Shown here piece by piece: positions 1 through 64,000 of a stretch of DNA of 64,000 nt. The translations under genes were made by a program, and so were the position numbers. Below the pieces are notes generated by a model. That model did not search any database. It was not told the origin of the DNA and saw only the letters and a program-made list of their open reading frames with translations. Each line of letters opens with the position of its first letter. Within the stretch, counting starts at the first letter, position 1. Source of the DNA: Phaeosaccion multiseriatum (lineage: Eukaryota > Protista > Ochrophyta, other classes); assembly GCA_965112735.1 (NCBI GenBank), contig OZ218962.1, forward strand, positions 1,302,001 through 1,366,000, in the 5' to 3' direction.

Positions 1-7
1 CTTTCAG

Positions 8-3000
8 AGAGGGACGGGCCAGCGCATTTGCCTGCTTCACTGGGACAGCTTGGGTGGGGTGGGTCTCACAAGGAACCCCCGCTTTGCTTCTTCTTTGTCG
101 GGGACGGACATCTTGTACCTCCTCTTGGACCAGAGGCACTACTCCCGCCTCACACCCTCATCCGCCTTCACCAGCAGCCGGGTCGCCCAACTGCCCGTCG
201 CGAAGCTCCTTGGAGGCGACGCCCTGCTCCTTGGAGGGGCGCGCGAAGCGAGCGACGGAGGCCAGCAGGAGGGGTCCCCGCCGGGTCAGCACTCGTCATA
301 TGTTCCGACATCGCCGAGCGGGAGAAAAAGACGCAAGTCGAACGACAAAGGCCTCAGTGCTGGTAGTGGTGCAGCGAGCGAGGCGGCGGGTCGTCAGCAG
401 TCACGTGGTTCGTCGTCGGCGGGGGGTGATGGACAAGACGCGATTTACGTCTACGGCTCCGATGAAGAGTACCCCGAGCAGCCAGCCAGCACTGGTGCTC
501 GGCTCCAATCAGCGAGCGACGAGGAGGTACGTTAGTTCACCACGTCAAGTAGCTAATTTCCGTAAGTCAATGGGGCGGGGCCAGCAAACTGAAACTTTCG
601 GAAGCCCATTGACTGACTTGATTTGCTTGTTTGGGCACCTTGGCGCTCTCCTGTCAGGTGGCATTCGAGTGGGATGGGGCCACGGACGACGAAGCAGTTC
701 GGGCGGCATACATCCGCCCGAACCAGCTTCTCGATGACAGTCAACACATGGAGCTCCTCACTCAAGCCTTGGTGAGCGAGCGAGGCAGGCCAGTGGGTGG
801 TGGCTGGCTGGTTGCTTGAATCATTTCGATTTGTTGCTTGCTTCTTTTCTTGACCCACACACACCACCTGCATTTCCTTGCTTCTAGGAGAATTGGTGGT
901 GCTCAGAACACCCCAACAGGAGGGCCGCTCCTCCAGGGCTCGGAAACGCCGCGCGCAGCCACGCTTTGGATCTGCTGGTGGTAAGGCCAAGAACAAGGGA
1001 CGACTTGACTTTGCCTCGCTCTTCTGGTTTGCTTACATGCTCCCTGTTCCCTGCTCATTAGGTCTCCGACCGTATTGTTTCGGCGCTCCCGGCCGGGCAA
1101 CAAGGAGGTGACGAGGACACCAAGTTGCCGGCACCGGAACCAAGAACAAATCAGGTAGCTACTAGTACTACAGGCAGGCACAAGCCAAGTGCTGGTGAGA
1201 GCCGCGGGGCTTTGCAAACAAACACTAACGCACAAACGTTGCTTGCACAAACAGGATGACGACTCGGGTGCGGAGGAGACCAAGGGGGGCGGCAAAGAGC
1301 AGGTGAGCGAGCTGCGGCCGGGGCTTTCTTGTAACAACAAACACCCACTCACACACACGGCGCGCACAGTCACAGCACACACAGAGAAAGACACACACGC
1401 AGCCCCCCCTCCTCCTCTCTCTCCTCTCCTCTCTTCTCTCTGTTCCTGTTGCTCTTCCTCTTTCGTCCTCCTCCCCTTCCCTCTCCCTCTTTCTTCTATC
1501 CTCCCTCCTGTCTCCCCTCTCCCCTCTCCTCCTCCTCCTCCTCCTCCTCCGCCTCCTCCTCCTGCTCCGCCTCCTCCTCCCCCTCCTCCTCCTCCTGCTC
1601 CTCCGCCTCCTCCTCCTCCTCCTCCTCCTCCTCCTCCTCCTCCTCCTCCTCCTCCTCCTCCTCCGCCTCCTCCTCCTCCTCCTTCTCCTCCTCCCTCTCC
1701 TCCCTCTCCTCCTCCTCCTCCTCCTCCTCCTCCTCCTCCTCCTCCTCCTCCTCCTCCTCCTCCTCCCCTCCCCATCCCTCCTCCTCCTCCTCCTCCTCCT
1801 CCTCTCTCCTCTCTCCTCTCCCCTTCCCCTCCCCTTCCTCTGCTCCTCCTCTCTCTTCTCTCCCTCGCTCCTCTCTTTTCTCTCCCTTCTCTCTTCTCCT
1901 CTCTCTTCTCTCTTCTCTCCCCTTCCCTCCTTCTCCTCCTCTCCTCTCTCCTCTCCCCTTCCCCTCCCCTTCCTCTGCTCCTCCTCTCTCTTGTCTCCCT
2001 CGCTCCTCTCTATTCTCGCCCCTTCTTTCCTCCTCCTCCTCCTGTCTCCTACCCCCCCCCCCCCATCTTTCCTCTCTCCCCTCTCTCTTCTCCTCTCTCT
2101 ACTCTCTTCTCTCCCCTTCTCTCCTTCTCCCCTCTCTCTTCTCCTCTCTCTCCTCTCTCTATCCCCGTTCCTCCTCCTCCTCCTCCTCCTCCTCTCCCCC
2201 TCCCCTTCCCTCCCTCGCCCCCCCCCCTCCTATCTCCCCCCCCCCCCCCCTCCTTCCTCTGCTCCTCCTCTCTCTTCTCTCCCTCGCTCCCCTCTCTTCT
2301 CTCCCCTTCCTTCCTCTCTCCTCTCTCCACTCTCCTCTGTCCTCTCTCCTCTCTCCTCTCTCTTCTCTCTTCTCTCCCCTTCCCTCCTTCTCCTCCTCTC
2401 CTCTCTCCTCTCCCCTTCCCCTCCCCTTCCTCTTTCTTCTATCCTCTCTCCTGTCTCCCCTCTCCCCTCTCCCCTCTCCTCCTCCTCCTCCTCCTCCCCC
2501 CATCCTCCTCCTCCTCCTCCTCCTCCTCCTCCTCCTCCTAGTCCTCCTCTCCCCTTCCCTTCCTCGCTCCTCGCTCTTCCTCCTCCTCTCCCCTCCTCTC
2601 CCTCTCCCCTCCTCCTCCTCCTCCTGTCCCCTTCCCCCCCTCCCCCCTCCCCCCTCCTCTCTCCTCTCTCCTCTCTCCTCTCCCCTTCCCCTCCCCTTCC
2701 TCTGCTCCTCCTCTCTCTTCTCTCCCTCGCTCCTCTCTATTCTCTCCCCTTCTTTCCTCCTCCTCCTCCTGTCTCCTACCCCCCCCCCCCATCTCTCCTC
2801 TCTCCCCTCTCTCTTCTACTCCTCCTCCTCTCTCCTACCTGCTCCCCTGCTCCTCTCCCCTCTCTCCTCCTCTCTCCTCTCTCCTCTCCCCTTCCCCTCC
2901 CCTTCCTCTGCTCCTCCTCTCTCTTCTCTCCCTCGCTCTCTCTCTTCTCTCTTCTCTCCCCTTCCTTCCTCTCTCCTCTCTCCACTCTCCTCTCTCCTCT

Positions 3001-6000
3001 CTCCTCTCTCTTCTCTCTTCTCTCCCCTTCCCTCCTTCTCCTCCTCTCCTCTCTCCTCTCCCCTTCCCCTCCCCTTCCTCTGCTCCTCCTCTCTCTTCTC
3101 TCCCTCGCTCCTCTCTATTCTCGCCCCTTCTTTCCTCCTCCTCCTCCTGTCTCCTACCCCCCCCCCCCCCATCTCTCCTCTCTCCCCTCTCTCTTCTCCT
3201 CTCTCTACTCTCTTCTCTCCCCTTCTCTCCTTCTCCCCTCTCTCTTCTCCTCTCTCTCCTCTCTCTATCCCCGTTCCTCCTCCTCCTCCTCCTCCTCCTC
3301 TCCCCCTCCCCTTCCCTTCCTCTGCTCCTCCTCTCTCTTCTCTCCCTCGCTCCTCTCTCTTCTCTCTTCTCTCCCCTTCCTTCCTCTCTCCTCTCTCCAC
3401 TCTCCTCTGTCCTCTGTCCTCTCTCTTCTCTCTTCTCTCCCCTTCCCTCCTCTCTCCTCTCCCCTTCCCCTCCCCTTCCTCTGCTCCTCCTCTCTCTTCT
3501 CTCCCTCGCTCCTCTCTATTCTCTCCCCTTCTTTCCTCCTCCTCCTCCTGTCTCCTACCCCCCCCCCCATCTCTCCTCTCTCCCCTCTCTCTTCTCCTCT
3601 CTCTTCTCTCTTCTCTCCCCTTCCCTCCTTCTCCTCCTCCTCCTCTCTCCTACCTGCTCCCCTGCTCCTCTCCCCTCTCTCCTCCTCTCTCCTCTCTCCT
3701 CTCCCCTTCCCCTCCCCTTCCTCTGCTCCTCCTCTCTCTTCTCTCCTCTGTCCTCTCTCCTCTCTTCTCTCCCCTTCTCTCCCCTTCCCTCCTCTCTCTT
3801 CTCTCTTCTCTCCCCTTCCTTCCTCTGTCCTCTCTCCTGTCTTCTTTCTCTTCTCTCCTCTCTCTTCTCTCTTCTCTCCCCTTCCCTCCTTCTCCTCCTC
3901 CTCCTCTCTCCTACCTGCTCCCCTGCTCCTCTCCCCTCTCTCCTCCTCTCTCCTCTCTCCTCTCTCTCCTCTCTCTTCTCTCTTCTCTCCCCTTCCCTCC
4001 TCTCTCCTCTCTCCACTCTCCTCTGTCCTCTGTCCTCTCTCCTGTCTTCTTTCTCTTCTCTCCTCTCTCTTCTCTCCCCTTCCCTCCTTCTCCTCCTCTC
4101 CTCTCTCCTCTCCCCTTCCCCTCCCCTTCCGCTTTCTTCTATCCTCTCTCCTGTCTCCCCTCTCCCCTCTCCCCTCTCCTCCTCCTCCTCCTGTCCCCAT
4201 CCTCCTCCTCCTCCTCCTCCTCCTCCTCTCCCCTTCCCTTCCTCGCTCCTCGTTCTTCCTCCTCCTCTCCCCTCCTCTCCCTCTCCCCTCCTCCTCCTCC
4301 TCCTGTCCCCTTCCCCCCCTCCCCCCTCCCCCCTCCTCTCTCCTCTCTCCTCTCTCCTCTCCCCTTCCTCTCCCCTTCCCCTCCCCTTCCTCTGCTCCTC
4401 CTCTCTCTTCTCTCCCTCGCTCCTCTCTATTCTCGCCCCTTCTTTCCTCCTCCTCCTCCTCTCTCCTACCCCCCCCCCCATCTCTCCTCTCTCCCCTCTC
4501 TCTTCTCCTCTCTCTTCTCTCTTCTCTCCCCTTCCCTCCTTCTCCTCCTCCTCCTCTCTCCTACCTGCTCCCCTGCTCCTCTCCCCTCTCTCCTCCTCTC
4601 TCCTCTCTCCTCTCCCCTTCCCCTCCCCTTCCTCTGCTCCTCCTCTCTCTTCTCTCCCTCGCTCCTCTCTCTTCTCTCTTCTCTCCCCTTCCTTCCTCTC
4701 TCCTCTCTCCACTCTCCTCTGTCCTCTCTCCTCTCTCTTCTCTCTTCTCTCCCCTTCCCTCCTTCTCCTCCTCTCCTCTCTCCTCTCCCCTTCCCCTCCC
4801 CTTCCTCTGCTCCTCCTCTCTCTTCTCTCCCTCGCTCCTCTCTATTCTCTCCCCTTCTTTCCTCCTCCTCCTCCTCTCTCCTACCCCCCCCCCCATCTCT
4901 CCTCTCTCCCCTCTCTCTTCTCTCTTCTCTCCCCTTCCCTCCTTCTCCTCTCTCCTCCTCTCTCCTACCTGCTCCCCTGCTCCTCTCCCCTCTCTCCTCC
5001 TCTCTCCTCTCTCCTCTCCCCTTCCCCTCCCCTTCCTCTGCTCCTCCTCTCTCTTCTCTCCCTCGCTCCTCTCTCTTCTCTCTTCTCTCCCCTTCCTTCC
5101 TCTCTCCTCTCTCCACTCTCCTCTGTCCTCTGTCCTCTCTCCTGTCTTCTTTCTCTTCTCTCCTCTCTCTTCTCTCTTCTCTCTTCTCTCCCCTTCCTTC
5201 CTCCTCCTCCCCTTCCTCTCCCCTTCCTCTGCTCCTCCTCTCTCTTCTCTCCCTCGCTCCTCTCTATTCTCTCCCCTTCTTTCCTCCTCCTCCTCCTGTC
5301 TCCTACCCCCCCCCCCCATCTCTCCTCTCTCCCCTCTCTCTTCTCTCTTCTCTCCCCTTCCCTCCTCCTCCTCTCTCCTACCTGCTCCCCTGCTCCTCTC
5401 CCCTCTCTCCTCCTCTCTCCTCTCTCCTCTCCCCTTCTCCTCCTCCTCCTCTCTCCTACCTGCTCCCCTGCTCCTCTCCCCTCTCTCCTCCTCTCTCCTC
5501 TCTCCTCTCCCCTTCCCCTCCCCTTCCTCTGCTCCTCCTCTCTCTTCTCTCCTCTCTCTCCTCTCTCTCCTCTCTTCTCTCCCCTTCTCTCCCCTTCCCT
5601 CCTCTCTCCACTCTCCACTCTCCTCTGTCCTCTGTCCTCTCTCCTGTCTTCTTTCTCTTCTCTCCTCTCTCTTCTCTCTTCTCTCTTCTCTCCCCTTCCC
5701 TCCTCCTCCTCCCCTTCCTCTCCCCTTCCTCTCCCCTCCTCCCCTTCCCTCCTCCTCCTCCTCCTCCTCCTCCTCCTCCTCCTCCTCTCCCCTTCGCTCC
5801 CTCGCCCCCCCCTCCTTCCTCTGCTCCTCCTCTCTCTTCTCTCCCTCGCTCCCCTCTCCTCTCTCCTACCCCCCCCCCCATCTCTCCTCTCTCCCCTCTC
5901 TCTTCTCTCTTCTCTCCCCTTCCCTCCTTCTCCTCCTCCTCCTCTCTCCTCCTCCTCCTCTCTCCTCCTCTCTCCTACCTGCTCCCCTGCTCCTCTCCCC

Positions 6001-6427
6001 TCTCCTCCACCTACACACACACAGAGAGAGAGAAAGACCCACACAGCAGCACCCACCACTCACATGCACACTCACGTTCCCCCCCCCCCCCCCACCCACC
6101 CACCCCCAGGAGGAGGAGCATGACCAAGGCTCGGGTGTGGAGAAGAGCCAGGGGGGTATCGGCGACGACGATGAGATCCTATGGTGGGAGTCCTCCATCA
6201 GCAGCGGATGCGACAGCGCCAGTTGCAGCGGCGATGAGGAGGGCGGCGATGAGGAGGGCAACGATGCCTGGATGGAGCAGGCATTCTTTGCCGAGGACGC
6301 GACACAAGAATCGGAAGCCCCGCCCCCCGCCGATACCGACTCCAACGTGCAGCGCCCCCCCCGAGCCGCGCAGGCTACTGCTTCACCACCGCCAGCCGCC
6401 GAGCCTGATGCAGCAGCAACAGTAGCA

Positions 6428-6510
<83 letters not shown>

Positions 6511-9500
6511 GGTTGACCGGAAGTGTGTGCAAGACTATCTGGAGAAATTGCAAGACACGGAAGTGGTGCCATGCACGGAGAGTCACTCGCCCAGCGAGGT
6601 GAAGCTGAAGGTGCTCAAAGTTGTGCAGGAGCTGGGATTGCTCGTCTCCGGCGGCTTTGCGCGGGACATTGCGATGCATGCCATGCACGGGCCGCAGGGG
6701 ACCTACAAAGGCGACATTGACATTCACGTACCTGACCGCAGTTCCCTCGGCGAAGTCTCGAACCTGCTGCAAACCGAACTTGGGAAACGCTTGGGCCTTG
6801 TGCGGTGTGAGCCTCGTGGCGGCTATGCCCGGAGGCCCTCCTCACGCGTCAGGTCGCTTTTTTTTACCAGAGAGGGAGGAGGAGCGGTACCGGAGGGGCA
6901 GCAAGGTATCCCCTTGCACAGGGACGTCACAGGGAAGCTCCTCATTCCGGATCTGAAGGCCCAGACGATTGAGGTACAGCTCGTCAACAGCATGGCCTTT
7001 CTACATGCGCCAGGAGCAGACTGTACCATCAACGCCATGTGTCTACAGGGTTGGAAACTCTCTGTCAAGCACCAGCCCAGAGGGTGGAAGGGTCCCACGC
7101 TCACAGTGGATATCGTACTGCAGCACGTGCGCAACAAGGAAACCTTCTGGGTTAGTGGAGCACCAACACACCATAAGCTGCAAAGGTTGAAGGCACTTGT
7201 AAAGCGCTTCACCGGCCTCGAGTACCGTGGCCGGGGCTCGTGGCCCTGTCTGGGGGCAGGCGACAGTAGCGGAGGAGGAGGATTGGCCGCTGCTCTCCAG
7301 CAACGAGCTAGGGAGAATGGCACCAACACGGCACTGTGCAACGACTTTCCGCTGGAGCGTATCGATGCTGTGCTCAAGCTCATTCCCTCAACACTGCTTG
7401 CCCTTTTCGAGAAGTGCTTCGATATGAAGCTGTCCGTCGAACAATTTGCCCAAGTCTTCGACAAGCTACGTCCCGTCCCGCCCCCGGAGGAGCAGGAGCA
7501 GGGGGGGGGGTGTGTCTACGCAGCCTTTGTCCACCTTAACAACAAGCCCACGCCTCAGCCCATTCAACGTGGGCCGGCAGCACAAGCTCTGGAGAACTGG
7601 CTGGCCGAGGCGGAGAGGAACGGTACGCCCGTCCCCCGCGGCTTTGCTCAGCTTGTGGAGGACATACGCAGGGGCAACCCCAACGACAATATATCCTTCA
7701 TGTACGTGGGTGAGACCGGAGCAGACGATCCCACGGGGCCGCGTTGGTGGCCACATGCGAAGCGCACCATGGCCAGTGGGGCCAAGTGCTTCAATGCCAT
7801 CATCGATGCCCTGGAGATGGCCGGAATTGTGGGCGCGGACTCCGTCTTTAAGTCCTTTCGAGTGGTTGTGCGAGCCAAAGCAACCGCTTCACCCACTGGC
7901 GGCAAGCCCATCTCGGCCTTCGAGAACCGAAAGGACTTGGAGGCCGTGGTGTGCGAGTTGCTTGGGGCGCATCGACGGAATCCAGGCCAAGACAACGGCG
8001 GCGTTATCCTCGGGACACAGACCAAAAGCGGGGGCTGTGCTCATGGCTCTGCCACTCAGGAACCCCCCACGTTTTCTTGTAGCGCAAGGGTGCAGCTCCT
8101 CCGAGCGAAGAAAATCGAACCCGATCTGCCCTACGACCAGCACCCCTCCCTGGATCTGCGTGTGTACTGCTCTAACCACATTCAGGAACACCCGCCTTCC
8201 GCCCGCTCTCGCATGTCGGATTGGCCTGGACGCGTGCCCACACTGTCGGAGGTGTACGGTTCCGTTTGCTCTCTTGGTGGTACGTCAAATGCATCGGGAA
8301 GGACCGGGCCGTCGTACAGAGGTTCCTTGCTTCGCCGTCGTGCACCGTACGCCACACTGCCATCTCATAAATCGCTCCTCACACCCTTCACACTCCCTCC
8401 CCTTCCCTCTCCTCCCATACCCTACCTCCTCCTCCTCCTCCTCCTCCTCCTCCTCCTCCTCCTCCTCCCCTTCCATCCTCTTCCTCCCTCCTCCCTCCTC
8501 TACCCTCCCTCCTCTATCCTCCCTCCTCCTCCTCCTCCTCCTGCTCCTCCTCCTCCTCCTCCTCCTCCTCCCCTTCCCCCCTCCTCCTCCTCCTCCTCCT
8601 CCTCCTCCTCCTCCTTCTCCTCCTCCTCCTCCTCCTCCTCCTCCTCCTCCTCCTTCTCCTCCTCCCCTTCCATCCCCTTCCTCCCTCCCCCCTCCTCTCT
8701 CCTCCCTCCTATCCTCCCTCCTCCTCCTCCTTCTCCTCCTCCTCCTCCTCCTCCTCCTCCTCCTCCTCCTCCTCCTCCTCCTCTTCTTCCATCCTCTTCC
8801 TCCCTCCTCCCTCCTCTCTCCTCCCTCCTCTCTCCTCCCTCCTCTTCTTCCTCCTCCTCCTCCTCCTCCTCCTCCTCCTCCTCCTCCTCCTCCTCCTCCT
8901 CCTCTCTCCTCTCTCCTCCCTTCCTTTCCTCCTCCTCCTCCTCCCCTTCCCTCCTCCTCCTCCTCCTCCTCCCTCCTCTCTCCTCCCTCCTCTATCCTCC
9001 CTCCTCTTCCTCCTCCTCCTCCTCCTCCTCCTCCTCCTCCTCCTCCTCCTCCATCTCCTGCACCTCCTCCTCTCTCCTCCCCCTCTCTCCTCCCTCCTCT
9101 ATCCTCCCTCCTCTTCCTCCTCCTTCTCCTCCTCCTCCATCCCTCCTCCTCCTCCTCCTCCTCCTCCTCCTTCTCCTCCTCCTCCTCCTCCTCCTTCTCC
9201 TCCTCCTCCCCTTCCATCCTCTTCCTCTCTCCTCCCTCCTCTATCCTCCCTCCTTCTCCTCCTCCTCCTCCTCCTCCTCCTCCTTCTCCTCCTCCTCCCC
9301 TTCCATCCTCTATCCTCCTGCTCCTCCTCCTCCTCCTCCTCCTCCTCCTCCTCCTCCTCCTCCTCCTCCTCCTCCTCCTCCTCCTCCTCCTTTTCCACCT
9401 CCTCCTCCTCCTCCTCCTCCTCCTCCTCCTCCTCCTCCTCCTCCTCCTCCTCCTCCTCTTCCTCCTCTTCCTCCTCCTCCTCCTCCTCTTCCTCCCTCCT

Positions 9501-12371
9501 CCCTCCTCTATCCTCCCTCCTCTATCCTCCCTCCTCTTCCTCCTCCTCCTCCTCCTTCTCCTCCTCCTCCTCCTCCCCTTCCCTCCTCCTCTTCCTCCTC
9601 CTCCTCCTCCTCCTCCTCCCCTTCCATCCCCTTCCTCCCTCCCCCCTCCTCTCTCCTCCCTCCTATCCTCCCTCCTCGTCCTCCTTCTCCTCCTCCTCCT
9701 CCTCCTCCTCCTCCCCTTCCATCCTCTTCCTCCCTCCTCCCTCCTCTCTCCTCCTTCCTCTCTCCTCTCTCCTCCCTCCTCCCTCCTCTTCCTCCTCCTC
9801 CTCCTCCTCCTCCTCCTCCTCCCCTTCCATCCTCTTCCTCCCTCCTCCCTCCTCTCTCCTCCCTCCTCTCTCCTCTCTCCTCCCTCCTCCCTCCTCTTCC
9901 TCCTCCTCCTCCTCCTCCTCCTCCCCTTCCATCCTCTTCCTCCCTCCTCCCTCCTCTCTCCTCCCTCCTCTCTCCTCTCTCCTCCCTCCTCCCTCCTCTT
10001 CCTCCTCCTCCTCCTCCTCCTCCTCCTCCTCCTGCTCCTCCTCCTCCTCCTCCTCCTCCTCCCCTTCCTGACTCTTCCTCCCTCCTCTCTCCTCTCTCCT
10101 CCCTTCCTTTCCTCCCTCCTCCCTCCTCTATCCTCCCTCCTCTTCCTCCTCCTTCTCCTCCTCCTCCTCCCCTTTCATCCTCTTCCTCCCTCCTCTCTCC
10201 TCTCTCGTCTCTCCTCCCTCCCTTTCCTCCTCCTCCTCCTCCTTCTCCTCCTCCTCCTCCTCCTCCTCCTCCTCCTCCTCCCCTTCTCTCCTCCTCCCTC
10301 CTCTCTCCTCCCTCCTCTTCCTCCTCCTTCTCCTCCTCCTCCTCCCCTTCCATCCTCCTCCTCCTCCTCCCCTTCTATCCTCTTCCTCCCTCCTGCCTCC
10401 TCTATCCTCCCTCCTCTCTCCTCCCTCCTCTTCCTCCTCCTCCTCCTCCTCCTCCTTCTCCTCCTCCTCCTCCTCCTCCTCCCCATCCCTCCTCCTCCTC
10501 CTCCCCATCCCTCCTCCCCATCCCTCCTCCCCATCCCTCCTCCTCCTCCTCCTTCTCCTCCTCCTCCTCTCTCGTCCCTCTCTCCTCCCTCCTCTCTCGT
10601 CCCTCCTCGCTGCTCCTCCTCGCTCCTCGCTCCTCCTCCTCCTCCTCTCTCGTCCCCTCTCCTCCCCACCCACAGCTCGCACATTCTACGTCACGCCAAG
10701 GGATGGGAAGCGTACGAAGGTTGTCCTTCCGCCGAAGGGGGCTGAGGGCGACGACGGTAATGACGCCGAGCTGGTGAAGCTGGCGAAGGCGAGGAAGGCG
10801 GAGCTGTACTCTCTGAGCGGTCGGACGGTCTACCTTCCGGAGGAGAATGGTCGGTGCACCAAGGTCGTGCTTCCATCCGACTGGACCGGGAGGGACTTTG
10901 AGGGGCTCACGCCGTTGGAGCAGCGCGCTGTGAGGGAGAAGCGGCGGGTCAGCACCAAGGACGCCAGGACTGTATCTGTGACAGTTACCAATGAGGACGG
11001 TACCGAGGAGGATGTCGAGGTTATCGTGCCGGATGATTGGGAAAAGAAATTGCTGGACGACGGCCTCAATCCCCTCATGAGGGAGGCCATCGGGAAGAAT
11101 GAAGGAGGTCTACCAAGTGAGAGGTGAGTCGAGGTGTGTCGTAAGTCCCCCCCCCCCCCACCCCCCCCAGGACCTCGCTCAGTCCAGCCATCCCTGTTGT
11201 ACACCCCTACAGCCAATGCGTGCAGCGAGAAGGGCTGTGAGTGCACCACCATGATCCCGACCGAGTGTGTGTGCAACAATCACGAGCATCGTAAGAATAC
11301 CTCGACGACTGGGACTTGCGTGGTGGCCGACACCCGCGCGAAGCTCGTGGAGATGAAGCCTAGGGCTGATGCTGACAAGTGTCGTGGGTCATGGACTGAC
11401 AACCAGTTTCGGAACCGTGGGTGTCGATTTGATGGCATAAGCCAGCTCTCCAGGGGACAGAACGGCAGCGTTTACGAGCAGTTTAGACGGGAGAACAAGC
11501 AGGCGGGGCCGCATCAGGAAGGATGCATACATTACGACCGCAACGGCAGCTACCCGGAGTGGAGGGCCTGGACCGCCGTCCCTGTAAACGCAGCCAATGA
11601 CGCACGGGATGAGGTGACACGACAGTCGATCACGACACCACCACGGGTGCAGCCAACGTACAATGCCGACGGGAGGCGTGTCCAGCTCTGCCACACCTGT
11701 GGGCATCTGCACAACACCCGCACATACGGCCCATCGGTACATCGAGACTCACAGGCAGGAGGAGGCCATCCATGCACGGTGCCACCGCGCAAGGATAAAC
11801 CCTACAAAGCCCATCCGTGCCTTCAGGATTGCTGCGTGGGCGACTGCCTGCTCTCAGATGCAGAGCGTGCCGAGGCCATTGCGAATGCCGAGGTGGTGCG
11901 CCGGAGAGCAGCCGGTCTTCTGCCTACTAGGACATCAACACAGAGAGGGGGCGCGGGTAGGGGGGGGCGTTCGACTGATCCAAATCCTGATCCAAATCGA
12001 CGGCTCCCTCTGGTCAACGGCAACAACGCCCCGCGCTGCCATAAATGCGGCCACACCTTCAACACCAAAACGTTCGGCCCCGCGCTGCATCGGGACTCCA
12101 AGGCAGGGAGAATATTGGAGCCCCGATGCCGCGTGCCACCCGAAAGACAGCGTGACAGCGGTGGTCGCATGGGTTCTCACCGCTTTGAGAGGTACCCGTG
12201 CCTTCAGGATTGCTGCGTGGGCGACTGCCTGCTCTCAGATGCAGAGCGTGCCGAGGCCGTTGCGCTGGACGACATGGTGCGCCGAAGTGAAGCCGCTCTT
12301 GCGGCTGCTGGCACTGAGGAAGCCCCAGGACAGGGAACGGCACGGGGGGGGGTGGGGGGGGGCCGGGGGGG

Positions 12372-12440
<69 letters not shown>

Positions 12441-12465
12441 CGGGGTAGACGAAGGAGGTAGCTAG
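8..12465 (+). CDS. Large spliced multidomain protein (5'-partial): class II nucleotidyltransferase head + GIY-YIG-like nuclease + repeated modules + two Cys/His zinc-finger-like repeats
   Basis: Inferred exons 8-526, 658-771, 888-980, 1062-1154, 1255-1302 and 6110-8279 join in frame through GT-AG phase-0 introns. A phase-1 intron 8280-10675 leads to exon 10676-~11116, then ~11171/11212-12465 (this last junction is uncertain). Motifs: SGGFARD..GDIDIH (6650-6725), IEV, DCTINAM (7019-7039); GCVY (7508)..MYVGETG (7700)..RWWPH..DLE. Confidence 0.7.
1405..6010. repeat. ~4.6 kb almost pure C/T low-complexity tract inside inferred intron 1303-6109
   Basis: (CCT)n/(CT)n with recurring longer blocks such as ccccttcccctccccttcctctgctcctcctctctcttctctccctcgctcc; purines are rare. 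Confidence 0.97.
8375..10670. repeat. ~2.3 kb (CCT)n-rich polypyrimidine tract inside inferred intron 8280-10675
   Basis: Direct inspection; ends at cacag acceptor at 10675. Confidence 0.97.
12344..12445 (+). repeat. Poly-G run (~100 nt) encoding poly-Gly at the C-terminus; G-quadruplex potential
   Basis: Nearly uninterrupted G run; its length may be affected by homopolymer sequencing error. Confidence 0.9.
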
Positions 12466-41289: not shown

Positions 41290-42792
41290 TCAATAATCGC
41301 CGAGTTCATCATCATCTTCTTCCTCCTCTTCCTCCTCCGACTCGATCTCGTACTCGGCCTCGTGGTATATGTGGATCGAAAGCCCCTCCGGTCGATCAGC
41401 AGGCAGACGATAGTTGTCACCAACGGTTAGCTCCGTGAGGCCAGCAGGCAGCTTCTCAGTGGGGCAGGTATTGTTCCGTCCAAGCTTGAGAATCCGGAGC
41501 GAAGCAGGCAGCTCCAGAGGGAGGTTAAAGTTCCACCCCATGTGCACCTCCTCCACACCGCAAGGAAGGACCACGTGCTGATTGAATTTGTCGCCAAATC
41601 TGATCACCTTCAGCGTGGCAGGCAGCTCCAAAGGGAGGGTAAAGTCCCTACCCATGTGCACCTCCTCCACACCGCAAGGAAGGACCACGTGCTGATTGCA
41701 CCTTGCGCCAAATGCGATCTTCTTCAGCGAGGCAGGCAGCTCCAAAGGGAGGTTAAAGTTGTGCCCCATCTCCACCTCCTCCACACCGCAAGGAAGGACC
41801 ACGTGCTGATTGAAGCCATCGCTAAACTTGATCTTCTTCAGCGAGGCAGGCAGCTCCAAAGGGAGGTCGAAGAAATGCCCCATGTCCACCTCCTCCACAC
41901 CGCAAGGAAGGACCACGTGCTGATTGAAGCTTCTGCCAAATCTGATCTTCTTCAGTGAGGCAGGCAGCTCCACAGGGAGGTTAAAGTCCCCCAACACCAT
42001 CTGCACCTCCTCCACACCGCAAGGAAGGACCACGTGCTGATTGAACTTCGAGAATATAAACCTGATCTTCTTGAGCGAAGCGGGGAGATCCAGCAGAGGG
42101 AGGTTAAAGTCCTGCCCCACCTGCACCTCCTCCATACCGCAAGGAAGGACCACGTGCTGATTGAATTTCTTGCCAAATGTGATCTTCTTCAGCGAGGCAG
42201 GCAGCTCCAAAGGGAGGTTGAAGTCCCGCCCCATCTGCACCTCCTCCACGGTTCTTGGTAACGTGATGTTAGCTTGGTTGAAATTGTCCGAGAAACACAC
42301 ACGCTTGACCGATGCCGGTAATAGCGCCAACGCCTTCGTGACCAGAGCTTCGTCAGCGGAGGCCAGATCGAGACCATGAAAGTAGCTCCTGCTGGGGCCC
42401 AGACGCACAGCCGCAATGCCGAACGTGCGTCTTGGTTTGCCTCCCCCCATGCCTCCCTCTCCTTCTCCACTGCCAATGGCCCCCACCTCTGCCGCCAGAG
42501 ATGGTGAAGAACGAGTGTGCTTCTCCTCTTCCCGCTGCTGCCACCGGAGGAGACCGAGCATATGCTGTTGGACAGGGTCGGGCACAGCGCAATTCAGCAC
42601 GAGAGTACGTGATGTCACCTCGTCGAGGGCCCGGCTGACTCCCCAAAGTTCCTTGCTCTGCAGTACGGTATCGAGAACACCCCAGGCCGCTACAGTCTGG
42701 CTCCTGCTGTCCCCAGCTTGGGCGGTGCACGCAGTAGAGGGACCAGCGGCGCTCCGCTGCTGGGGCCGGCACTTCTCAGCGCGGCGTTTCAT
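41290..42792 (-). CDS. Intronless FNIP-type leucine-rich repeat protein with an acidic C-terminus
   Basis: Open frame from ATG 42792 (the ORF track starts at GTG 42879). About 7 units of 38 aa (FNQHVVLPCGVEEVxMGxx FNLPLELPASLKKIxFGxx) with a 114-bp nucleotide period. Confidence 0.88.
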   Translation of the reverse strand: MKRRAEKCRPQQRSAAGPSTACTAQAGDSRSQTVAAWGVLDTVLQSKELWGVSRALDEVTSRTLVLNCAVPDPVQQHMLGLLRWQQREEEKHTRSSPSLAAEVGAIGSGEGEGGMGGGKPRRTFGIAAVRLGPSRSYFHGLDLASADEALVTKALALLPASVKRVCFSDNFNQANITLPRTVEEVQMGRDFNLPLELPASLKKITFGKKFNQHVVLPCGMEEVQVGQDFNLPLLDLPASLKKIRFIFSKFNQHVVLPCGVEEVQMVLGDFNLPVELPASLKKIRFGRSFNQHVVLPCGVEEVDMGHFFDLPLELPASLKKIKFSDGFNQHVVLPCGVEEVEMGHNFNLPLELPASLKKIAFGARCNQHVVLPCGVEEVHMGRDFTLPLELPATLKVIRFGDKFNQHVVLPCGVEEVHMGWNFNLPLELPASLRILKLGRNNTCPTEKLPAGLTELTVGDNYRLPADRPEGLSIHIYHEAEYEIESEEEEEEEDDDELGDY

Positions 42793-43564
42793 TGGCTGCG
42801 CTTCTTGTTCCCTTTCGGGGGAAAGAAAAATGGCGGGGGCCCCGGTGCTGAGAGCGATGTGATAGTTGACAGCAGTCACGGCTGTAGAGGAGAAGGTGAG
42901 GTGCGGGAAGATGGCTCAAGTCCTGCGTATTCGCGTTGAAAGTTTGCTCAAGTCCTGCAATGTGGGAGCTCCCCCGAAGTCAACCTCTGTGAAGTCTGTG
43001 TTGAAGCACCAACACGCGAACTCGGTCCCTACGAGGATCCGAGATTATCGATCCGAGGAGAAATTTAGGAAGGAGAAGAGCAGGAAAAAAGCTAAATCGC
43101 GGCCGCGAAGGGGGCGGCCGCAGCAGTAGCAGCAGCTGCTGAAAGGAAAGGAGGACGTGGACCTAACATGTTTTATTTTAAAGCAAAAGAAGGAGAGTAC
43201 AGACCTTGCCGAAGAAAGAGACAGGATGAGCAGCGAGTGGTGCAAATGGAGCACCTCCAAGGGTGGGAAGATGTCAACGAACTCACTCACTAAGGCCAAT
43301 CATGGCTTTGACGGCGACTCCTCCTTTCAGGATTTCAAGAAGTGGAAGGAGCTGGAGAGAACAAGAAGGAGGCGGAGGGGAAAAAAAAACCCGTGCGGCT
43401 TCCCGCCGAAGTACGTGGTCAATACGGAAGGGAGGGAGGTGTAGATTGTGGGTTCTTTTGGATTCGTGTGCCTCTCTCCGTCCATGCCGCTCCTCTCTAT
43501 CTATGTTATCTCTCGCCCTTTCCCTCCCTCTCCTCATGTCATCATGTTACATGTCCATTGTCCA

Positions 43565-59179: not shown

Positions 59180-62100
59180 CGGAGGCTCCTCAGGAAAGGA
59201 GAGTGGCGTTTGGCAGATACAGCCCGGAGAGGAAAAGGAGATCATCGTGGTCACATTTAGGGGCACAAAGCCCCGCTTGTACAAGGGCTATGTCCACATC
59301 AAGACGAACAGAGAAGGCATGGTGCTGCCGGTTGAGTTCGTGGTGGACAGCGCGGGCGTTGTGGCCAACCCCGCCGCCATTGACTTTGGTATCCTGACCA
59401 CCCCGAGGGAGAAGCGGAGCGTGGAGGTGCTGCTGCACAACAGCAGCCCGGATCCCCTGCGCATCGTTGATGTGCATCCCGCCATCCCTGACGAGTGCTT
59501 GCAGCTCACCTTTGACAAAGGAAGGGTGTTGAGTCCCGGACAGGCTCTGAAGGACGGGTTTCGGGCGGAGTATGTGGGCAGCAAGGAGACCAAGGGCAGG
59601 AAGGCGGGCCAAATTGTGGTCATATCCAATCACACCAACCCTGCGCTGGCGGTTACAGAGGTGGCCTACTCGTCGAGGTAAGAGGAGGGAGGGAGAGGGT
59701 ATGGTCAGGACCAAAAATAGTCAAGAGAGAGACAGAGAGGGGGGGCAGTGGGGAGAAGGGGAGACGGAGGAATCCACTCTACCATGTGTGTTTGTGCTTA
59801 CCCTTCGTGGCCAATGAGAGACAGAGAGACGAGGACGGGGGTAGTGGGTGAAGGAGGAAATGTGCCTACCTGCATACCCTACCATGGTTGGTGACCAACG
59901 CCCTGTTCCCCTGCTTGTTTGGCACGACCCTTGCTTACGTTACCTCCACTCCAGGATCATGCACGGCGGCGTGGGCTATGTGCACTCAGAGATTTGCTTC
60001 GCGCTGCCCTTGGTGTCGCCTCCTCGTCGCCCTCTGGAGCAGATGAGCGCATTCCCTCCTTCAGGATACAACTACACTGCAGCAGCCGGGGGGAAGTGTG
60101 GAGGAACCAACTTCTGTGGGGAGGTGGGCGCTGAGGGGCAAGTCGAAGAGGCGGCGTCGGCGGTGGTTGCTTCGTATGCGCCAGCCACAATCAGGGCAAG
60201 GGAGGTGGGAGACACTGTCCGTGAGCTGAACCTCATCAACTTCTTCAAGGAGCCCCTGCACCTGCTGGGGGTGTCCATTCCCGATTGTGCAGACATACTT
60301 GCCGTTGAGAGCACCCCAGACGCGTCATCCGCAGCAGCGGTGGCCACGCCCAACGCCAACTGGGGCAACATCCGCGTCAGGTTGGGAGGGGAGGCCGTAC
60401 TGGAGCGGCTGTCACACTTCTTTGCTGGGAATACAACTGCTCCTGCTCCTCCTACTCCTACTGCCACCCCTAGAAGCGGCGAGAAGGAGGACCAGCAGCG
60501 TGTGCACCCCATGCCCTTCCAGTGCACGCTGGAGCTGCAGACCAACGTGTCTACTCACCGTATCTCTTTGCACATGTTCGATCAGCGCCTCCACGCCAAC
60601 GTCATGCCCTTCAACGATGGCGAGCGGCCAAGCAAGTGTCAGCTACGAGAGGTGAGCGATGTGATTGACCAAGTGGGGCCGACCAAGTGGGGCCGGCGAG
60701 GCTTGCTCTGTTGCCAATCTCGTCTGCGTCTGGGCCAGGTTGTTTGATTTTCTTGTCGGGTTGCTCGTGTGTTTGACCAAGTCGACTTGGTGTGTGTGAT
60801 AGACAGCTCTAACGCCCGTCTACCTCTCCTCTGTGACCTTTTCGCGTACTCGTTCTATGTGTGTGTGTGTGTGTGTGTGTGCTTTTCTGTAGGCTGGAAC
60901 GACGACAGGGCCGTTGACAAAGGCCGAGGCGGGGGAGGGCACCAAGGGGTGGCAGGACGGCAACGAGCAGGAGCAGTACTCGTCCACGGACGACGACTCC
61001 ATACCACCCGGCATGATGAGGACCCCACTGGGAGGCTGGACGGAGGATGGCTTTATGAGCGTCGACATGGGCCTCACCTTCCCAGGCGCCACCCTCAGAC
61101 GACGATTCACCTTGACGAATGCCAATCCTGTAGCTGTTAATTTGACTGGCTCCTCTCTGGGTTTCCACTTTGCGACACTGCGCCTCGTGTCGCAGGATTC
61201 GTCCCCTTACGCCCCGGCCAACTTGCAACGAGCGGCAGCCAGGATCACTTCAGATAGCGGTGAGGAGACCGAGTGTATGGAAGGCAGTATTGGTGACGGA
61301 GGAGAGTTTGTGCATACGACCATCAGCGGTTTCAGCGGTAACGTGGAGTGTTCGGGGGGGGCTGCGGGCTCACACAGAGAAGACGACGAAAGACAAGTGT
61401 TTGATTGGGAGGAGGAGTGGGATGCCGAGGGTTGGGTTTTGGACCCCAAGAAGGGCAAACAGTCGTCGCTACCAAGGTCTGGCAGTTGTAAGGAGCAAGA
61501 GGAGGCACGATGCTGTAGGGAGCAGGAGGAGGCAAAATGCCGCAGGGAGCAAGAGGAGGCAAAATGCCGCAGGGAGCAGGAAGCGTGCCGGAAGGAACAG
61601 GAGGAGGCAAGAAGAGGGTGCAGTATAGAGACGGAGGAGCGCAAAGGCGGCAAACTGAAGAAAGAGGAGGCGGTGGCGGCGAGCTGCGGAGCGAATAAGA
61701 AGGCAGCAGACAGCAAGCAGCACAAGAAAGATAAGGATAAGAGCAAGCACGAGGCGGAGGTGGGGACCAAAACCAGCTGCAGCGTGGAGACTACGGGGCC
61801 AGGGCAGGGGCAGGGGACGGGGCAGCAGCTCAAGCTCCATCGGGAGACGGTGAGCGGCAACTCTGTCTATAAGGAGGAGGTGACGCACCCCAGGGAGTCG
61901 AGGAGACGACACGCCAACAGCGGTGGGGTCACCAGTCATTACGACAAGAACGGTGCGCCGGTATGGCAGGTGCTGCCCGGGCAAGTGGCCAAGTTCGAAG
62001 TCACTACTCTCGTGCCTCCCAGCAAGGCTACTCCTGCGGGGAAGAGTAAGAAGATGGAAAGTCTTGGCACCGAGCAGGTTCAAATCAGGGGCTTGGAGTT

Positions 62101-64000
62101 GACAACACCCACCCAGCGTATTCCACTCCAGCTGAACTACACTGTGGTCACTGGGGAGATTCGGTTTAAGGACGACAAGGTGTTTCTGGGCAAGCTCGCG
62201 CCGGGGGCGAAGCTCAGTCACCCCATTAGTGTCGTCTCCTCCATAAGCCGCGGGTACAACGTGTCATGTGTCAACACTAGCAAGGACGGATTTGCAGTGA
62301 CGATAGACTCGTTTGTGGTGCCCGGAGCAGTCGTCTCGAGTGAGTTGGGACATGCAGCAGCAGCAGCAGCAGCAGTAGGAGGAGGAGGGGGAGTAGGAGG
62401 AGAGGTTGTGTCACAGTCGGTAGAAGAGCACGCAGCAGCAGCAGTCGCAGCAGCTCAGGTGGAGGCAAGGTTGGGGCAGGTGGAGCTCAGCTACAGCAGC
62501 ATTTGCAAGAAGCTGGACTTGTGGGCGTGTGTGCTTATGTTTGCCACCTCCCGCAAAGAAGAGCTTGTGCACGTCATGTCCAGGAAAGAGCTCAAGGTGG
62601 CAAGTGGGGCCGCGAGCTGCATTCACCAGGACAGAACCGTGCACCTCACCACCAGAGGGGGCAAGCCAGGCAGCCAGCGACACCAGCTGCAGATGTGGAT
62701 GGGCGTCCTGAAACTTGGCAAGAGTGTGCCCGAGATTCCGCGCGGGGTGTCGCTGACCTCCTTCCTCTTGACACCGACCATTGCCACCGCTGCACGGATT
62801 CTTCACCAGCGCTGGAGGGAGACTGCCTTCATGCAGTGGAACCTCGTAGACACCTCTGTCTCTCTAAGCACCTCCGTGGTAGGCATGGCGCCTCCTGCCT
62901 CCATGCGGGTGGCCGCGTCCATCCACGTGCCCATCTTTTTCGGTGGAGCTGTGGGAGGACTCTCCTTTCCGGTGACACAGGTGAGTGTCAATGGGTGGGG
63001 GTGGGTGGAAAGGGCGCTCATGGTGGGTGGGCGTGAGTGGGTTGGTAGCCGGCTTTTGTGGGCAAGGGAAAGAGGAGCATCGTGGTCTTTCCTCATTCAC
63101 TGACTCTCTCTCTCTCTCTCTCTACGTGTGTCCTACTTGTCCCTCCTCTGTAGGTGGGAATGCGCCAAACTGCCTGGGTGAGGGTCCACAACCCTACATC
63201 GGTACCTGTGACATTGCGACTGGTCACAGAGGGGGCAAAGGCAAAGTTTGGGCAGGGATGGAAGGGGCCTTCTGACGCGGCGCAGTCCACCATTGCTTGG
63301 GCGGCGTATGGGCGCGGTGATGAGAAGGGGCCAGAGCCGGTTAGATATGGGCCGACTGTATTGCATAGCGACGGCAAGGGAGTGGGTCGGGCAGGCGGCG
63401 TCCAGCGAGGCAGCAGCAGCAGCAGCAGCAGCAGGAGCAGCAGCAGCAGCAAAGGGATGTCTAGAGAGGAGGAGCAAGAACCTTTCTCTCTTGCGGCCGC
63501 TGTGAAAGTTGATGCCCTACTTCTCCCGGGGGAGGAGGCGGAGCTCGGGCCCATCTACTTTGAGCCCACAAGTCCAGACTGGGCCTACACAGGCTACGTC
63601 TATATCGTCAACAGCATGACCAGAATAGAGCCCGTGATGCTGCACGGGGCGAGCGGGATGGGAAAGCTCGCCCTCCGTATGGTGCCGGACAAGAAGGAGG
63701 GACGACGAAAGCAAGCACGTGGCGCGAGTGCGAGCGACGGTGTGAGCGTGGGCGGTATAGGGCATGGCGGCAGTGAGGCCCAGGAGGAGGATGGGAAGAA
63801 GAAAAAGAAAAAGAAGAGGAAGAAAAAGAAGAGGAAGACGAAGAAGAAGACGAAAAAGCAGGAGAAGGGTCAGGCCTTCTACGAGGCGAGGGTGCAAGCC
63901 ATCCGAGACGAGAGGAGAAAGAGCGTCAGCTCTACTTTTTCGGATCGAGGGGTGGCATCCTTTGTTGTGAATGGCAGGGACATCTCATTAGGGTCGGACT
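57984..64000 (+). CDS. TMEM131: TMEM131-like protein (3'-partial), multi-exon
   Basis: N-terminal hydrophobic segment; LAPGESTKLQLIYLPRELG..LVLSTSLGNIVYPIQATAVQNPYRL, LYNPHDTVLSISEIFST, WQIQPGEEKEI, IDFGILT, and later YFEPT..YIVNSMTRIEPVMLHG..G.GKL. Confidence 0.82.
61488..61615 (+). repeat. 24-nt coding tandem repeat (EQEEAKCRR-like) in the TMEM131-like gene
   Basis: About 5 imperfect copies. Confidence 0.8.

What the first reader, a model, noticed from the sequence alone, without database searches (positions are those of the whole stretch)
6110..8279. Class II nucleotidyltransferase fused to a GIY-YIG-like endonuclease in one eukaryotic exon
Seen: one exon carries GGFARD..DID (6650-6721), IEV and DCTINAM (7019-7039), then GCVY (7508), YVGETG (7703), RWWPH (7742), DLE (~7935) and a terminal GG. 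Established: GGxVRD/DxD/EV/RDFTINA are the signatures of the CCA-adding/bacterial poly(A) polymerase head, and GxY..YVG..R..H..E are the GIY-YIG catalytic motifs. I know of no housekeeping protein that combines them. Inference: a cut-and-tail or cut-and-repair enzyme acting on RNA or DNA ends, a defence/effector protein (NTase plus nuclease, conceptually like nucleotide-signalling defence systems), or the core of an unusual mobile element. The gene is hidden because its introns are kilobases of low complexity and the six-frame track buries it in a 2928-aa Pro/Ser/Leu ORF.
Basis: partly seen in the sequence, partly recalled or inferred. Interest (0 to 1): 0.88.

Follow-up and report, generated by a model that had tools for sequence, protein, structure and literature searches.

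The report
Divergent nucleotidyltransferase exon in giant gene
A real 2.2-kb coding exon, probably the middle of a gene of more than 1,590 codons in a GC-rich alga, encodes a protein with no detectable relatives; its first half is most likely a very divergent nucleotide-adding enzyme of the phage Gad2 / CCA-adding kind, and the claimed DNA-cutting (GIY-YIG) half rests on motifs only.

Summary
Exon 6110-8279 (+) is open for 723 codons, uses the host's codons, has AG/GT borders, and carries every motif at the stated coordinates.

It is probably not a gene of its own. Eight canonical GT-AG exons (2-526 to 11171-12465) join into one 1,592-codon frame. That frame starts outside the window, in a gene another reader called USP+OTU. 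It ends after two Cys/His modules. No RNA data could be obtained.

The protein is an orphan. Exhaustive phmmer over 1.84 billion proteins, Pfam, PDB, PHROGs, NCBIfam and PADLOC gave nothing significant.

NTase half: probability about 0.8.
- Standard profile tests are only marginal (P 0.035-0.19).
- Conserved blocks of the class II and Gad2 families fall in the right order (2/20,000 and 0/20,000 shuffles).
- A protein-language-model search returns Gad2/PolyA_pol clusters at 0.95.

GIY-YIG half: probability about 0.45.
- The motifs are in order, but the GIY-YIG spacer is 61 residues and the block test gives only P about 0.04.
- The language-model hits (0.86) are a lead only, and the fold models were unusable.

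The scan already found a gene described with the same architecture on another piece of this genome (s1-338377). Function is inferred only.

The parts
6110..8279 (+). Coding exon, 2,170 nt (723 codons + 1 base); probably an internal exon
   Evidence: Open frame with P=6e-11 and other frames with 8-23 stops; AG acceptor at 6108-6109 and GTACGT donor at 8280; host-like codon usage in this frame only
6410..6511 (+). Poly-alanine tract encoded by a (GCA)n microsatellite, in a low-complexity acidic/Ala-rich linker (6110-6589)
   Evidence: Translation and sequence
6590..7252 (+). Nucleotidyltransferase-like domain (221 aa): GGFARD 6650-6667, DID 6713-6721, EVQLV 6971-6985, DCTINAM 7019-7039, KLQRLKALVKRF about 7175-7210
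   Evidence: Ordered-block test against class II (24.3 bits, 2/20,000 shuffles) and Gad2 (31.0 bits, 0/20,000); conditional test P about 0.0015; language-model neighbours Gad2/PolyA_pol at 0.95; hhalign P=0.035 on GG..DxD; phrog_11954 E=0.077
7253..7471 (+). Linker without any family match; helices in a low-confidence model
7472..8029 (+). GIY-YIG-like region (unproven): GCVY 7508-7519, YVGETG 7703-7720, RWWPH 7742-7756, DLEAVVCELL 7934-7963, Asn in RRNPG 7979-7981
   Evidence: UvrC-type blocks land on these motifs but only at P about 0.04; language-model neighbours GIY-YIG at 0.86, a lead only; no Pfam, PDB or hhalign support; AF2 pLDDT 44.7 and no fold match
1303..6109 (+). Inferred 4.8-kb intron of CT-rich satellite-like low complexity
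   Evidence: GTGAGC donor at 1303 and polypyrimidine + CAG acceptor at 6107-6109; GC skew -0.93; in-frame join 1302|6110
2..1302 (+). Inferred upstream exons of the same gene: 2-526 (cut by the window start), 658-771, 888-980, 1062-1154, 1255-1302
   Evidence: All have GT-AG borders, lengths that are multiples of 3, and are open in phase 0; frame 0 has the best codon-usage score in each exon tested (2-526, 658-771, 888-980, 1062-1154; 1255-1302 was not scored), weakly for 888-980
8280..10675 (+). Inferred 2.4-kb CT-rich intron
   Evidence: GTACGT donor at 8280; ccacag acceptor at 10673-10675. The split codon G|CT keeps the frame into the 10774-11127 ORF
10676..11116 (+). Inferred next exon (147 codons) with a thrice-repeated short motif (..TKVVLP.. 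/ ..VEVIVP..)
   Evidence: highest coding score of all exons, 0.57 bits/codon
11171..12465 (+). Inferred last exon: two roughly 90-aa Cys/His modules (CHxCGH...PCLQDCCVGDCLLSDAERAEA) starting at 11689 and 12037, a poly-Gly from a G homopolymer run (about 12345-12441), and stop TAG at 12463-12465
   Evidence: no family match

Best explanation
The exon is the central coding exon of a large, lineage-restricted nuclear gene of a GC-rich alga. At least 1,592 codons lie inside the window, and the N-terminus lies upstream in what another reader called a USP+OTU protease gene. Residues encoded by 6590-7252 form a very divergent pol-beta-superfamily nucleotidyltransferase of the class II / phage-Gad2 kind. 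It keeps the triphosphate-binding GG and the metal-binding DxD. A candidate third carboxylate is the E of IEVQLV. It has lost the RR and EDxxR residues that CCA-adding enzymes use to select ribose and base. It therefore most likely transfers nucleotides to a 3' end or another acceptor with a specificity of its own. The following region (7472-8029) may be a GIY-YIG-type nuclease with a long insertion in its first hairpin. If so, the protein could cut a nucleic acid and modify the new end, guided by the C-terminal Cys/His modules. Shown: the open frame, the codon usage, the motifs, the in-frame exon chain and the orphan status. Inferred: splicing, both folds, any catalysis and the biological role.
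For: Coding exon. One frame of 1,592 codons across eight GT-AG exons with only the terminal stop. Gad2 blocks score 31.0 bits (0 of 20,000). This is the best-scoring place in the six-frame translation of all 64 kb for both profiles. hhalign aligns GGFARD..DID to GGxVRD..DxD (P=0.035), and HMMER aligns DCTINAM to DxTiNA. A language-model feature search returns Gad2/PolyA_pol clusters at 0.95, for 33 of 40 hits, with 176-179 shared features. phrog_11954 gives E=0.077 over the QLV-DCTINAM stretch. GIY-YIG: blocks land on GCVY / YVGETG / DLEAVVCELL, and the top language-model neighbours are all GIY-YIG families. Same-genome notes describe a gene with the same architecture that was reported as expressed and spliced (not verified here).
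Against: No significant sequence relative was found anywhere: phmmer over 1.84 billion representatives gave 0 hits. The word-index searches, Pfam, PDB, NCBIfam and PADLOC, and viral and metagenome contigs also gave none. Full-profile scores are marginal: HMMER against shuffles P=0.047 (class II) and 0.068 (Gad2), and hhalign against Gad2 P=0.19. The locus was chosen for these motifs out of a whole-genome scan, so the unconditional block P-values are inflated. Natural decoys in this window reach 21-22 bits. RR of RRD and EDxxR are absent. GIY-YIG: 61 residues lie between the GIY and YIG motifs (62 from Tyr to Tyr), the block test gives only P about 0.04, hhalign gives P=0.38, and the language-model score of 0.86 is in the range a third of shuffled proteins reach. 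AF2 single-sequence models are unusable (pLDDT 35 and 45), and fold searches found nothing. No RNA evidence exists.
Confidence: 0.5

Rival explanations
1. The nucleotidyltransferase is real, but the C-terminal half is not a nuclease. It would be a lineage-specific alpha/beta domain in which YVG..R..H..E..N occurs by chance, so there is no cut-and-tail enzyme.
For: GIY-YIG support is weak: Pfam, PDB and hhalign are negative, the block test gives P about 0.04, the spacer between the two signature motifs is 61 residues, and no fold match was found.
Against: The top language-model neighbours are all GIY-YIG families, out of thousands possible. Y-V-G-x-T, R-x3-H, E and N stand in the family's order. 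Secondary structure in the low-confidence model is strand / inserted helices / strand / helix / strand / helix, which is compatible with the fold.
Confidence: 0.35
2. Both motif sets are chance resemblances in a fast-evolving orphan protein, and neither an NTase nor a nuclease is present.
For: There is no significant hit by any standard method. The locus was picked by eye for its motifs out of about 1,100 windows, and decoys in this window reach 21-22 bits.
Against: The language-model hit at 0.95 has a consistent family and at least 170 shared features. Two independent family profiles place their blocks at the same residues. A gene described with the same pair of motif sets is noted elsewhere in the genome (unverified).
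Confidence: 0.12
3. The exon is the first coding exon of a separate gene that starts at ATG 6272. The CT-rich 1303-6109 tract would then be intergenic or promoter DNA rather than an intron, so the protein is not fused to the upstream protease gene.
For: An in-frame ATG lies at 6272, before the domains. No RNA data show the 1302|6110 junction. Upstream exon 888-980 has a weak coding score.
Against: Four small upstream exons all have GT-AG borders, lengths that are multiples of 3 and open phase-0 frames, and they run into 6110 without a stop. A long pyrimidine tract followed by CAG directly precedes 6110. The acidic, Gly-rich composition continues across the join. Satellite-filled introns are noted elsewhere in this genome, and a follow-up reported one as removed in RNA (unverified).
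Confidence: 0.2
4. The gene is the cargo or enzyme of a mobile or virus-derived element (a selfish nuclease gene) rather than a host function.
For: The nearest families by language-model features are mostly viral. GIY-YIG nucleases often serve mobile elements (established knowledge). Several unusual nuclease fusions are noted in this genome (unverified).
Against: Codon usage matches the host. There are spliceosomal introns of the host's peculiar kind. No second copy lies in the window, and no look-alike was found in the scan index. No relative was found in viral contigs or phages. No terminal repeats, integrase or reverse transcriptase were seen.
Confidence: 0.08

Closest known systems
Gad2 (Gabija anti-defence 2) family of phage nucleotidyltransferases, Pfam PF26128; type protein in Bacillus phage SPbetaL7, OQ921347.1 109563-110765
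   Same: Same order of conserved blocks: [AS]GG, DxD, a Q-L-[IV] strand 14-18 residues before D-[FC]-T-[IV]-x-M, then a basic helix. It is the family most often returned by the language-model search. The domain is a stand-alone head of about 200 residues without the CCA-enzyme neck and body.
   Different: No significant similarity by BLASTP, HMMER or hhalign. Relative to the family there are 7-8 extra residues between GG and DxD and about 47 extra residues between the DxD and Q-L-[IV] blocks. The gene is eukaryotic, nuclear and intron-bearing, and the domain is embedded in a protein of more than 1,590 residues. The enzymatic reaction of Gad2 itself is not described in the one paper read (10.1101/2023.05.01.538930).
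Class II nucleotidyltransferases (CCA-adding enzyme, bacterial poly(A) polymerase I), Pfam PF01743 head domain
   Same: GGxxRD, DxD, a Glu-bearing strand and DxTINA occur in the right order.
   Different: No Pfam match even at E<=10. The RR before DxTINA is replaced by G-A, and the EDxxR templating motif by H-H-K-L-Q-R. There is no neck, body or tail and no HD domain. Spacing between the Glu strand and DxTINA is 16 residues against about 35.
GIY-YIG nuclease superfamily (UvrC N-domain, I-TevI, Slx1; Pfam PF01541 clan)
   Same: Tyr in a first strand, Y-V-G-x-T, Arg-x3-His, Glu and Asn stand in the family's order. The language-model neighbours are GIY-YIG families.
   Different: Y470 to Y532 is 62 residues, against 11 in the UvrC-type alignment. 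Y-to-R spacing is 13 against 10. There is no profile or fold support.
Gene on another piece of the same genome described as OTU-like + nucleotidyltransferase + GIY-YIG + DNA-binding-like modules (scan note s1-338377)
   Same: By its description it has the same architecture, the same orphan status and the same satellite-filled introns. The follow-up there reported expression and splicing.
   Different: Its sequence could not be obtained here, and the scan's sequence index found no look-alike. The two may therefore be less than about 60-70% identical, or not homologous at all.
Polyvalent proteins of phages and conjugative elements (Iyer et al. 2017, PMC5512222; abstract only)
   Same: Many enzymatic domains sit in one polypeptide.
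   Different: Those are prokaryotic mobile-element proteins. No homology or conflict role is shown here.

Membership tests
Class II nucleotidyltransferase (PF01743 PolyA_pol head) | Match to the family profile at or above Pfam's gathering score | tested here: not met
   No PF01743 hit even at E<=10 for the exon or for the domain alone. A profile built here gave -1.3 bits, P=0.047 against shuffles.
Class II nucleotidyltransferase (PF01743 PolyA_pol head) | Motif A: GGxVRD followed by the catalytic DxD | tested here: met
   GGFARD 6650-6667 and DID 6713-6721. hhalign aligns them to GGxVRD..DxD with a 7-residue insertion. Block scores are 10.4 and 11.2 bits.
Class II nucleotidyltransferase (PF01743 PolyA_pol head) | Motif B: RRDxTxNA, with both arginines | tested here: not met
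   The sequence reads P-G-A-D-C-T-I-N-A-M. D, T, I, N and A are kept, but R90/R91, invariant in alignment A1, are G and A.
Class II nucleotidyltransferase (PF01743 PolyA_pol head) | Motif D: EDxxR nucleotide-templating helix | tested here: not met
   The best placement is P-T-H-H-K-L-Q-R-L-K-A-L-V-K at -2.7 bits; E and D are replaced by H-H.
Class II nucleotidyltransferase (PF01743 PolyA_pol head) | Pol-beta nucleotidyltransferase fold | tested here: inconclusive
   The single-sequence AF2 model of 6518-8279 has pLDDT 34.9. There are no homologues from which to build an alignment.
Gad2 family (PF26128) | Match to the family profile | tested here: inconclusive
A 10-sequence profile built here gave hhalign P=0.19 and HMMER P=0.068 against shuffles.
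Gad2 family (PF26128) | Conserved blocks AGG / DxD / QLI / DFTIxM / RRLxFN / P..LRV.KY in order and spacing | tested here: met
31.0 bits, with 0 of 20,000 shuffles reaching it. The last two blocks are weak (3.9 and 0.8 bits).
Gad2 family (PF26128) | Nearest neighbours in protein-language-model feature space belong to the family | tested here: met
   33 of 40 hits are Gad2 clusters (some also PF01743), with score 0.95 and 176-179 shared features. The method was not calibrated for parts of proteins.
GIY-YIG nuclease superfamily | Match to a family profile (PF01541 and clan) | tested here: not met
   No hit at E<=10. hhalign against a UvrC-type alignment gave P=0.38 and aligned elsewhere.
GIY-YIG nuclease superfamily | GIY and YIG strands forming a tight hairpin about 10-11 residues apart | tested here: not met
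   GCVY at aa 467-470 and YVG at aa 532-534 of the exon are separated by 61 residues, 62 from Tyr to Tyr. The UvrC-type alignment has 11.
GIY-YIG nuclease superfamily | Catalytic Arg, His/Tyr, Glu and Asn in order after YIG | tested here: inconclusive
   R545, H549, E611/E616 and N624 are present in order. The blocks land on them, but chain P is only about 0.035-0.04.
GIY-YIG nuclease superfamily | GIY-YIG alpha/beta fold | tested here: inconclusive
   AF2 single sequence gave pLDDT 44.7. Foldseek against PDB found no match at E<=0.001. The Atlas shape search gave TM<=0.42, including two UvrC rows at 0.36-0.37 that mean nothing at this confidence.

The most novel reading that the evidence does not exclude
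This gene and its same-genome look-alikes would form an undescribed eukaryotic family of giant 'polyvalent' nuclear proteins. In them, ubiquitin-type proteases would be fused to a Gad2-like nucleotidyltransferase, a GIY-YIG nuclease and Cys/His nucleic-acid-binding modules. That would be an algal counterpart of the nucleotide-centred conflict systems of bacteria and phages, perhaps built on a nucleotidyltransferase captured from a virus and used against viruses or transposons by cutting and tailing their nucleic acids.
Probability: 0.15. Interest if true: 0.8.

Novelty: new variant of a known kind. Interest (0 to 1): 0.5.

Why it matters
If the domain calls hold, this would be the first eukaryotic, intron-bearing relative of the phage Gad2-type nucleotidyltransferases. 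No paper in the library searched describes an NTase joined to a GIY-YIG-like module, Cys/His modules and, probably, deubiquitinase domains. It would give a concrete, assayable example of how a stramenopile-type alga builds large lineage-specific nucleic-acid enzymes. It also shows that such genes escape annotation because kilobase satellite introns bury their exons. As it stands it is a well-defined orphan gene with one probable and one possible enzymatic domain, and no functional evidence.

Tried and rejected
- Pfam, PDB (phmmer), NCBIfam and PADLOC on the exon and on each half gave nothing. PHROGs gave only phrog_11954 at E=0.077.
- Homologue searches gave no relatives: the word index with 587 aa and with 220 aa, exhaustive phmmer over 1.84 billion representatives, viral and metagenome contig scans, and tblastn against phages. 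No alignment could therefore be built for AF2 or HHpred-style work.
- AF2 single-sequence models of 6518-8279 and 7472-8029 had pLDDT 35 and 45. Foldseek PDB and Atlas shape searches on the latter found nothing usable.
- An E. coli Cca search meant to collect diverse class II enzymes returned only sequences at least 85% identical, which wasted one search.
- Pairwise BLASTP against E. coli Cca and against Gad2 gave nothing.
- hhalign in a shuffle loop was too slow at 8 s per run, so I replaced it with HMMER --max and my own block-chain test.
- Rejected the idea of giving AF2 an alignment of class II or Gad2 proteins with the query, because that would force the fold and be circular.
- Rejected a 'recent foreign DNA' reading, because codon usage and introns are host-like.
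- The organism could not be named: run and organism labels are coded.
Full report
OBSERVATION

The stretch 6110-8279 lies in one frame of the mechanical 2,928-aa ORF 1991..10777. Outside 6110-8279 that ORF is Pro/Ser/Leu low complexity read from CT-rich DNA with GC skew about -0.93. Inside it the sequence is of normal complexity.

A long pyrimidine tract ending in CAG precedes 6110, and GTACGT follows 8279.

The open frame is not chance. P(no stop in 723 codons) is 6e-11 at this base composition, and the other five frames hold 8-23 stops. A codon-usage log-odds trained on Pfam-confirmed exons of the same window (kinase, TMEM131-like, Pyr_redox_dim, FNIP) scores this frame at +0.31 bits per codon, against -0.34 and -0.49 for the other two. 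So this is a genuine coding exon written in the host's codon dialect.

GENE MODEL (INFERRED, NO RNA)

Upstream, four short segments have canonical borders: 658-771, 888-980, 1062-1154 and 1255-1302. Each has a length that is a multiple of three, and each is open in phase 0. Together with 2-526 (cut by the window edge) they run into 6110 without a stop.

Downstream, the first AG after the CT-rich tract (10674-10675) completes the split codon. It puts the reading into the frame of ORF 10774-11127. A GTGAGA donor at 11117 and the acceptor at 11168-11170 then lead into ORF 11134-12465.

The eight exons give one frame of 1,592 codons whose only stop is TAG 12463-12465. Frame 0 has the best coding score in every exon tested, weakly for 888-980; the 48-nt exon 1255-1302 was not scored.

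A scan note (s1-326312) places the end of a 'USP + OTU' gene at 1-819 of this window. The exon is therefore probably the middle of that larger gene. The alternative, a separate gene starting at ATG 6272, is not excluded.

The last exon holds two roughly 90-residue Cys/His modules (starting at 11689 and 12037) and a poly-Gly read from a G homopolymer. No family matches them.

No RNA run holds the stretch.

ORPHAN STATUS

None of the following gave a relative:
- Pfam at E<=10;
- PDB sequences;
- the word-index search of 5.8 billion proteins, with the 587-aa and the 220-aa query;
- an exhaustive phmmer over 1.84 billion cluster representatives;
- IMG/VR and JGI metagenome contig scans;
- tblastn against 50,697 phage records;
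- NCBIfam and PADLOC.

The only near-threshold hit is phrog_11954 (unknown function, 173 positions). It scores E=0.077 over residues 119-189 of the N-domain, the stretch that contains IEVQLV and DCTINAM.

THE NUCLEOTIDYLTRANSFERASE HALF

I built a class II head alignment from E. coli Cca and six phage enzymes (A1).
- hhalign places GGFARD..DID on GGxVRD..DxD with a 7-residue insertion (P=0.035).
- HMMER with filters off aligns DCTINAM to DxTiNA. The whole-domain score of -1.3 bits is reached by 4.7% of shuffles.

By standard profile statistics the match is therefore marginal.

A protein-language-model feature search of the domain alone gave a clearer answer. It returned 40 named clusters, 33 of them carrying PF26128 (Gad2) and some also PF01743. 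Scores were 0.95, with 176-179 of 256 shared features. The tool states that shuffled proteins reach 0.95 about once in 100, and that it was not calibrated for parts of proteins.

Gad2 is a phage anti-Gabija protein predicted to be a nucleotidyltransferase (10.1101/2023.05.01.538930). I located it in phage SPbetaL7 (OQ921347.1 109563-110765). I built a 10-sequence alignment of its N-domain (A2).

That family shows AGG, DxD, a Q-L-I strand and, 18 residues later, F-D-F-T-I-x-M without the two arginines. This is the pattern and spacing of the algal protein (S-G-G, D-I-D, V-Q-L-V, then D-C-T-I-N-A-M 14 residues later). Full-profile tests are again weak (hhalign P=0.19; HMMER P=0.068).

I therefore scored only the conserved blocks of each family. 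They were chained in order with bounded gaps.
- Class II: 24.3 bits, reached by 2 of 20,000 shuffles.
- Gad2: 31.0 bits, reached by 0 of 20,000.
- For both profiles this is the best place in the six-frame translation of the whole window, where natural decoys reach 21-22 bits.

With GGFARD, DID and DCTINAM held fixed and everything else shuffled, the remaining Gad2 blocks score as high in only 30 of 20,000 trials.

My estimate is about 0.8 that this is a true pol-beta-type nucleotidyltransferase of the class II / Gad2 kind. It keeps GG and DxD. The third carboxylate is probably the Glu of IEVQLV, though that assignment is uncertain. The RR of RRD and the EDxxR templating helix are absent, as note s1-365238 also remarked. 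It is therefore not a CCA-adding enzyme, and its substrate cannot be read from the sequence.

THE GIY-YIG-LIKE HALF

Y-V-G-E-T, R-x3-H, E and N follow one another in the family's order. A G-C-V-Y strand lies upstream. However, the two signature motifs are separated by 61 residues, or 62 from Tyr to Tyr. In a UvrC-type alignment I built (A3) the Tyr-to-Tyr distance is 11.
- hhalign finds nothing (P=0.38).
- The language-model search returns only GIY-YIG families at the top (PF01541, PF19239), but at 0.86 with 82-98 shared features. The tool rates that as a lead only.
- An AF2 single-sequence model has pLDDT 44.7. Its strand / two helices / strand / helix / strand / helix order is compatible with an inserted hairpin, but it is not evidence.
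- Foldseek and Atlas shape searches give no usable match.

My estimate is about 0.45.

CONTEXT AND MECHANISM

Notes from the same genome describe another gene with 'OTU-like + nucleotidyltransferase + GIY-YIG + DNA-binding-like modules'. A follow-up reported that gene as expressed, spliced, orphan and probably a divergent CCA/PAP-type NTase. Other notes describe several giant genes joining ubiquitin-type proteases to nucleic-acid enzymes. I could not obtain those sequences, so they are leads and not support. They do mean the scan has met this architecture before on other DNA.

The most likely working model, all of it inferred, is a large nuclear protein whose central module transfers nucleotides to a nucleic-acid end or another acceptor. 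It may be coupled to a nuclease that creates that end, and targeted by the Cys/His modules. No paper in the library describes a CCA-type or Gad2-type NTase fused to GIY-YIG.

VERDICT
- Observation: confirmed.
- Interpretation: partly supported. The NTase is probable, the GIY-YIG is unproven, and the 'one exon = the gene' reading is corrected to a larger gene.
- Novelty: a new and very divergent variant of a known enzyme kind in an undescribed architecture.
- Interest: moderate (0.5).

Noticed in passing
window 11689-11960 and 12037-12320 (+): Two copies of a roughly 90-residue Cys/His module (CHxCGH..N-T-[RK]-T-[YF]-G-P..H-R-D-S..PCLQDCCVGDCLLSDAERAEA) in the inferred last exon. No Pfam, PDB, PHROGs, NCBIfam or PADLOC match. 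Possibly a new zinc-binding or nucleic-acid-binding module.
   Followed up: partly
window 12345-12441 (+): A G homopolymer run of roughly 90 bases read as poly-Gly just before the stop codon. The true length, and therefore the C-terminal frame, may be unreliable in the assembly.
   Followed up: no
window 10676-11116 (+): This exon has the highest coding score in the locus. It holds three short look-alike segments (FYVTPRDGKRTKVVLPP / VYLPEENGRCTKVVLPSDW / VSVTVTNEDGTEEDVEVIVPDDW), which suggests a small repeated beta unit.
   Followed up: no
window 2-140 (+): The segment ...DILYLLLDQRHYSRL... at the window start resembles the C-terminal His motif of OTU proteases. That fits the note that a USP+OTU gene runs into the window, but Pfam gives no hit on this fragment.
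   Followed up: partly
window 41290-42879 (-): An ORF with FNIP repeats (PF05725, E=1.7e-39), a repeat family known to me mainly from amoebae and giant viruses.
   Followed up: no
window 3265-6059 and 8285-10684 (-): Long Gly/Glu/Arg-rich ORFs on the minus strand are mirror images of the CT-rich satellite and not genes. They also produce the highest decoy score (21.2 bits) in the class II block test.
   Followed up: partly
window about 62100-63000 (+), inside ORF 60914-63103: Second-best score (21.6 bits) of the Gad2 block chain in the window, in an ORF with a weak MFS_5 hit. Probably a decoy.
   Followed up: no
tool library: The session's Pfam-A copy has no model for PF26128: genuine Gad2 from phage SPbetaL7 gets no hit. 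A blank Pfam result therefore says nothing about that family.
   Followed up: yes
   Followed up: no
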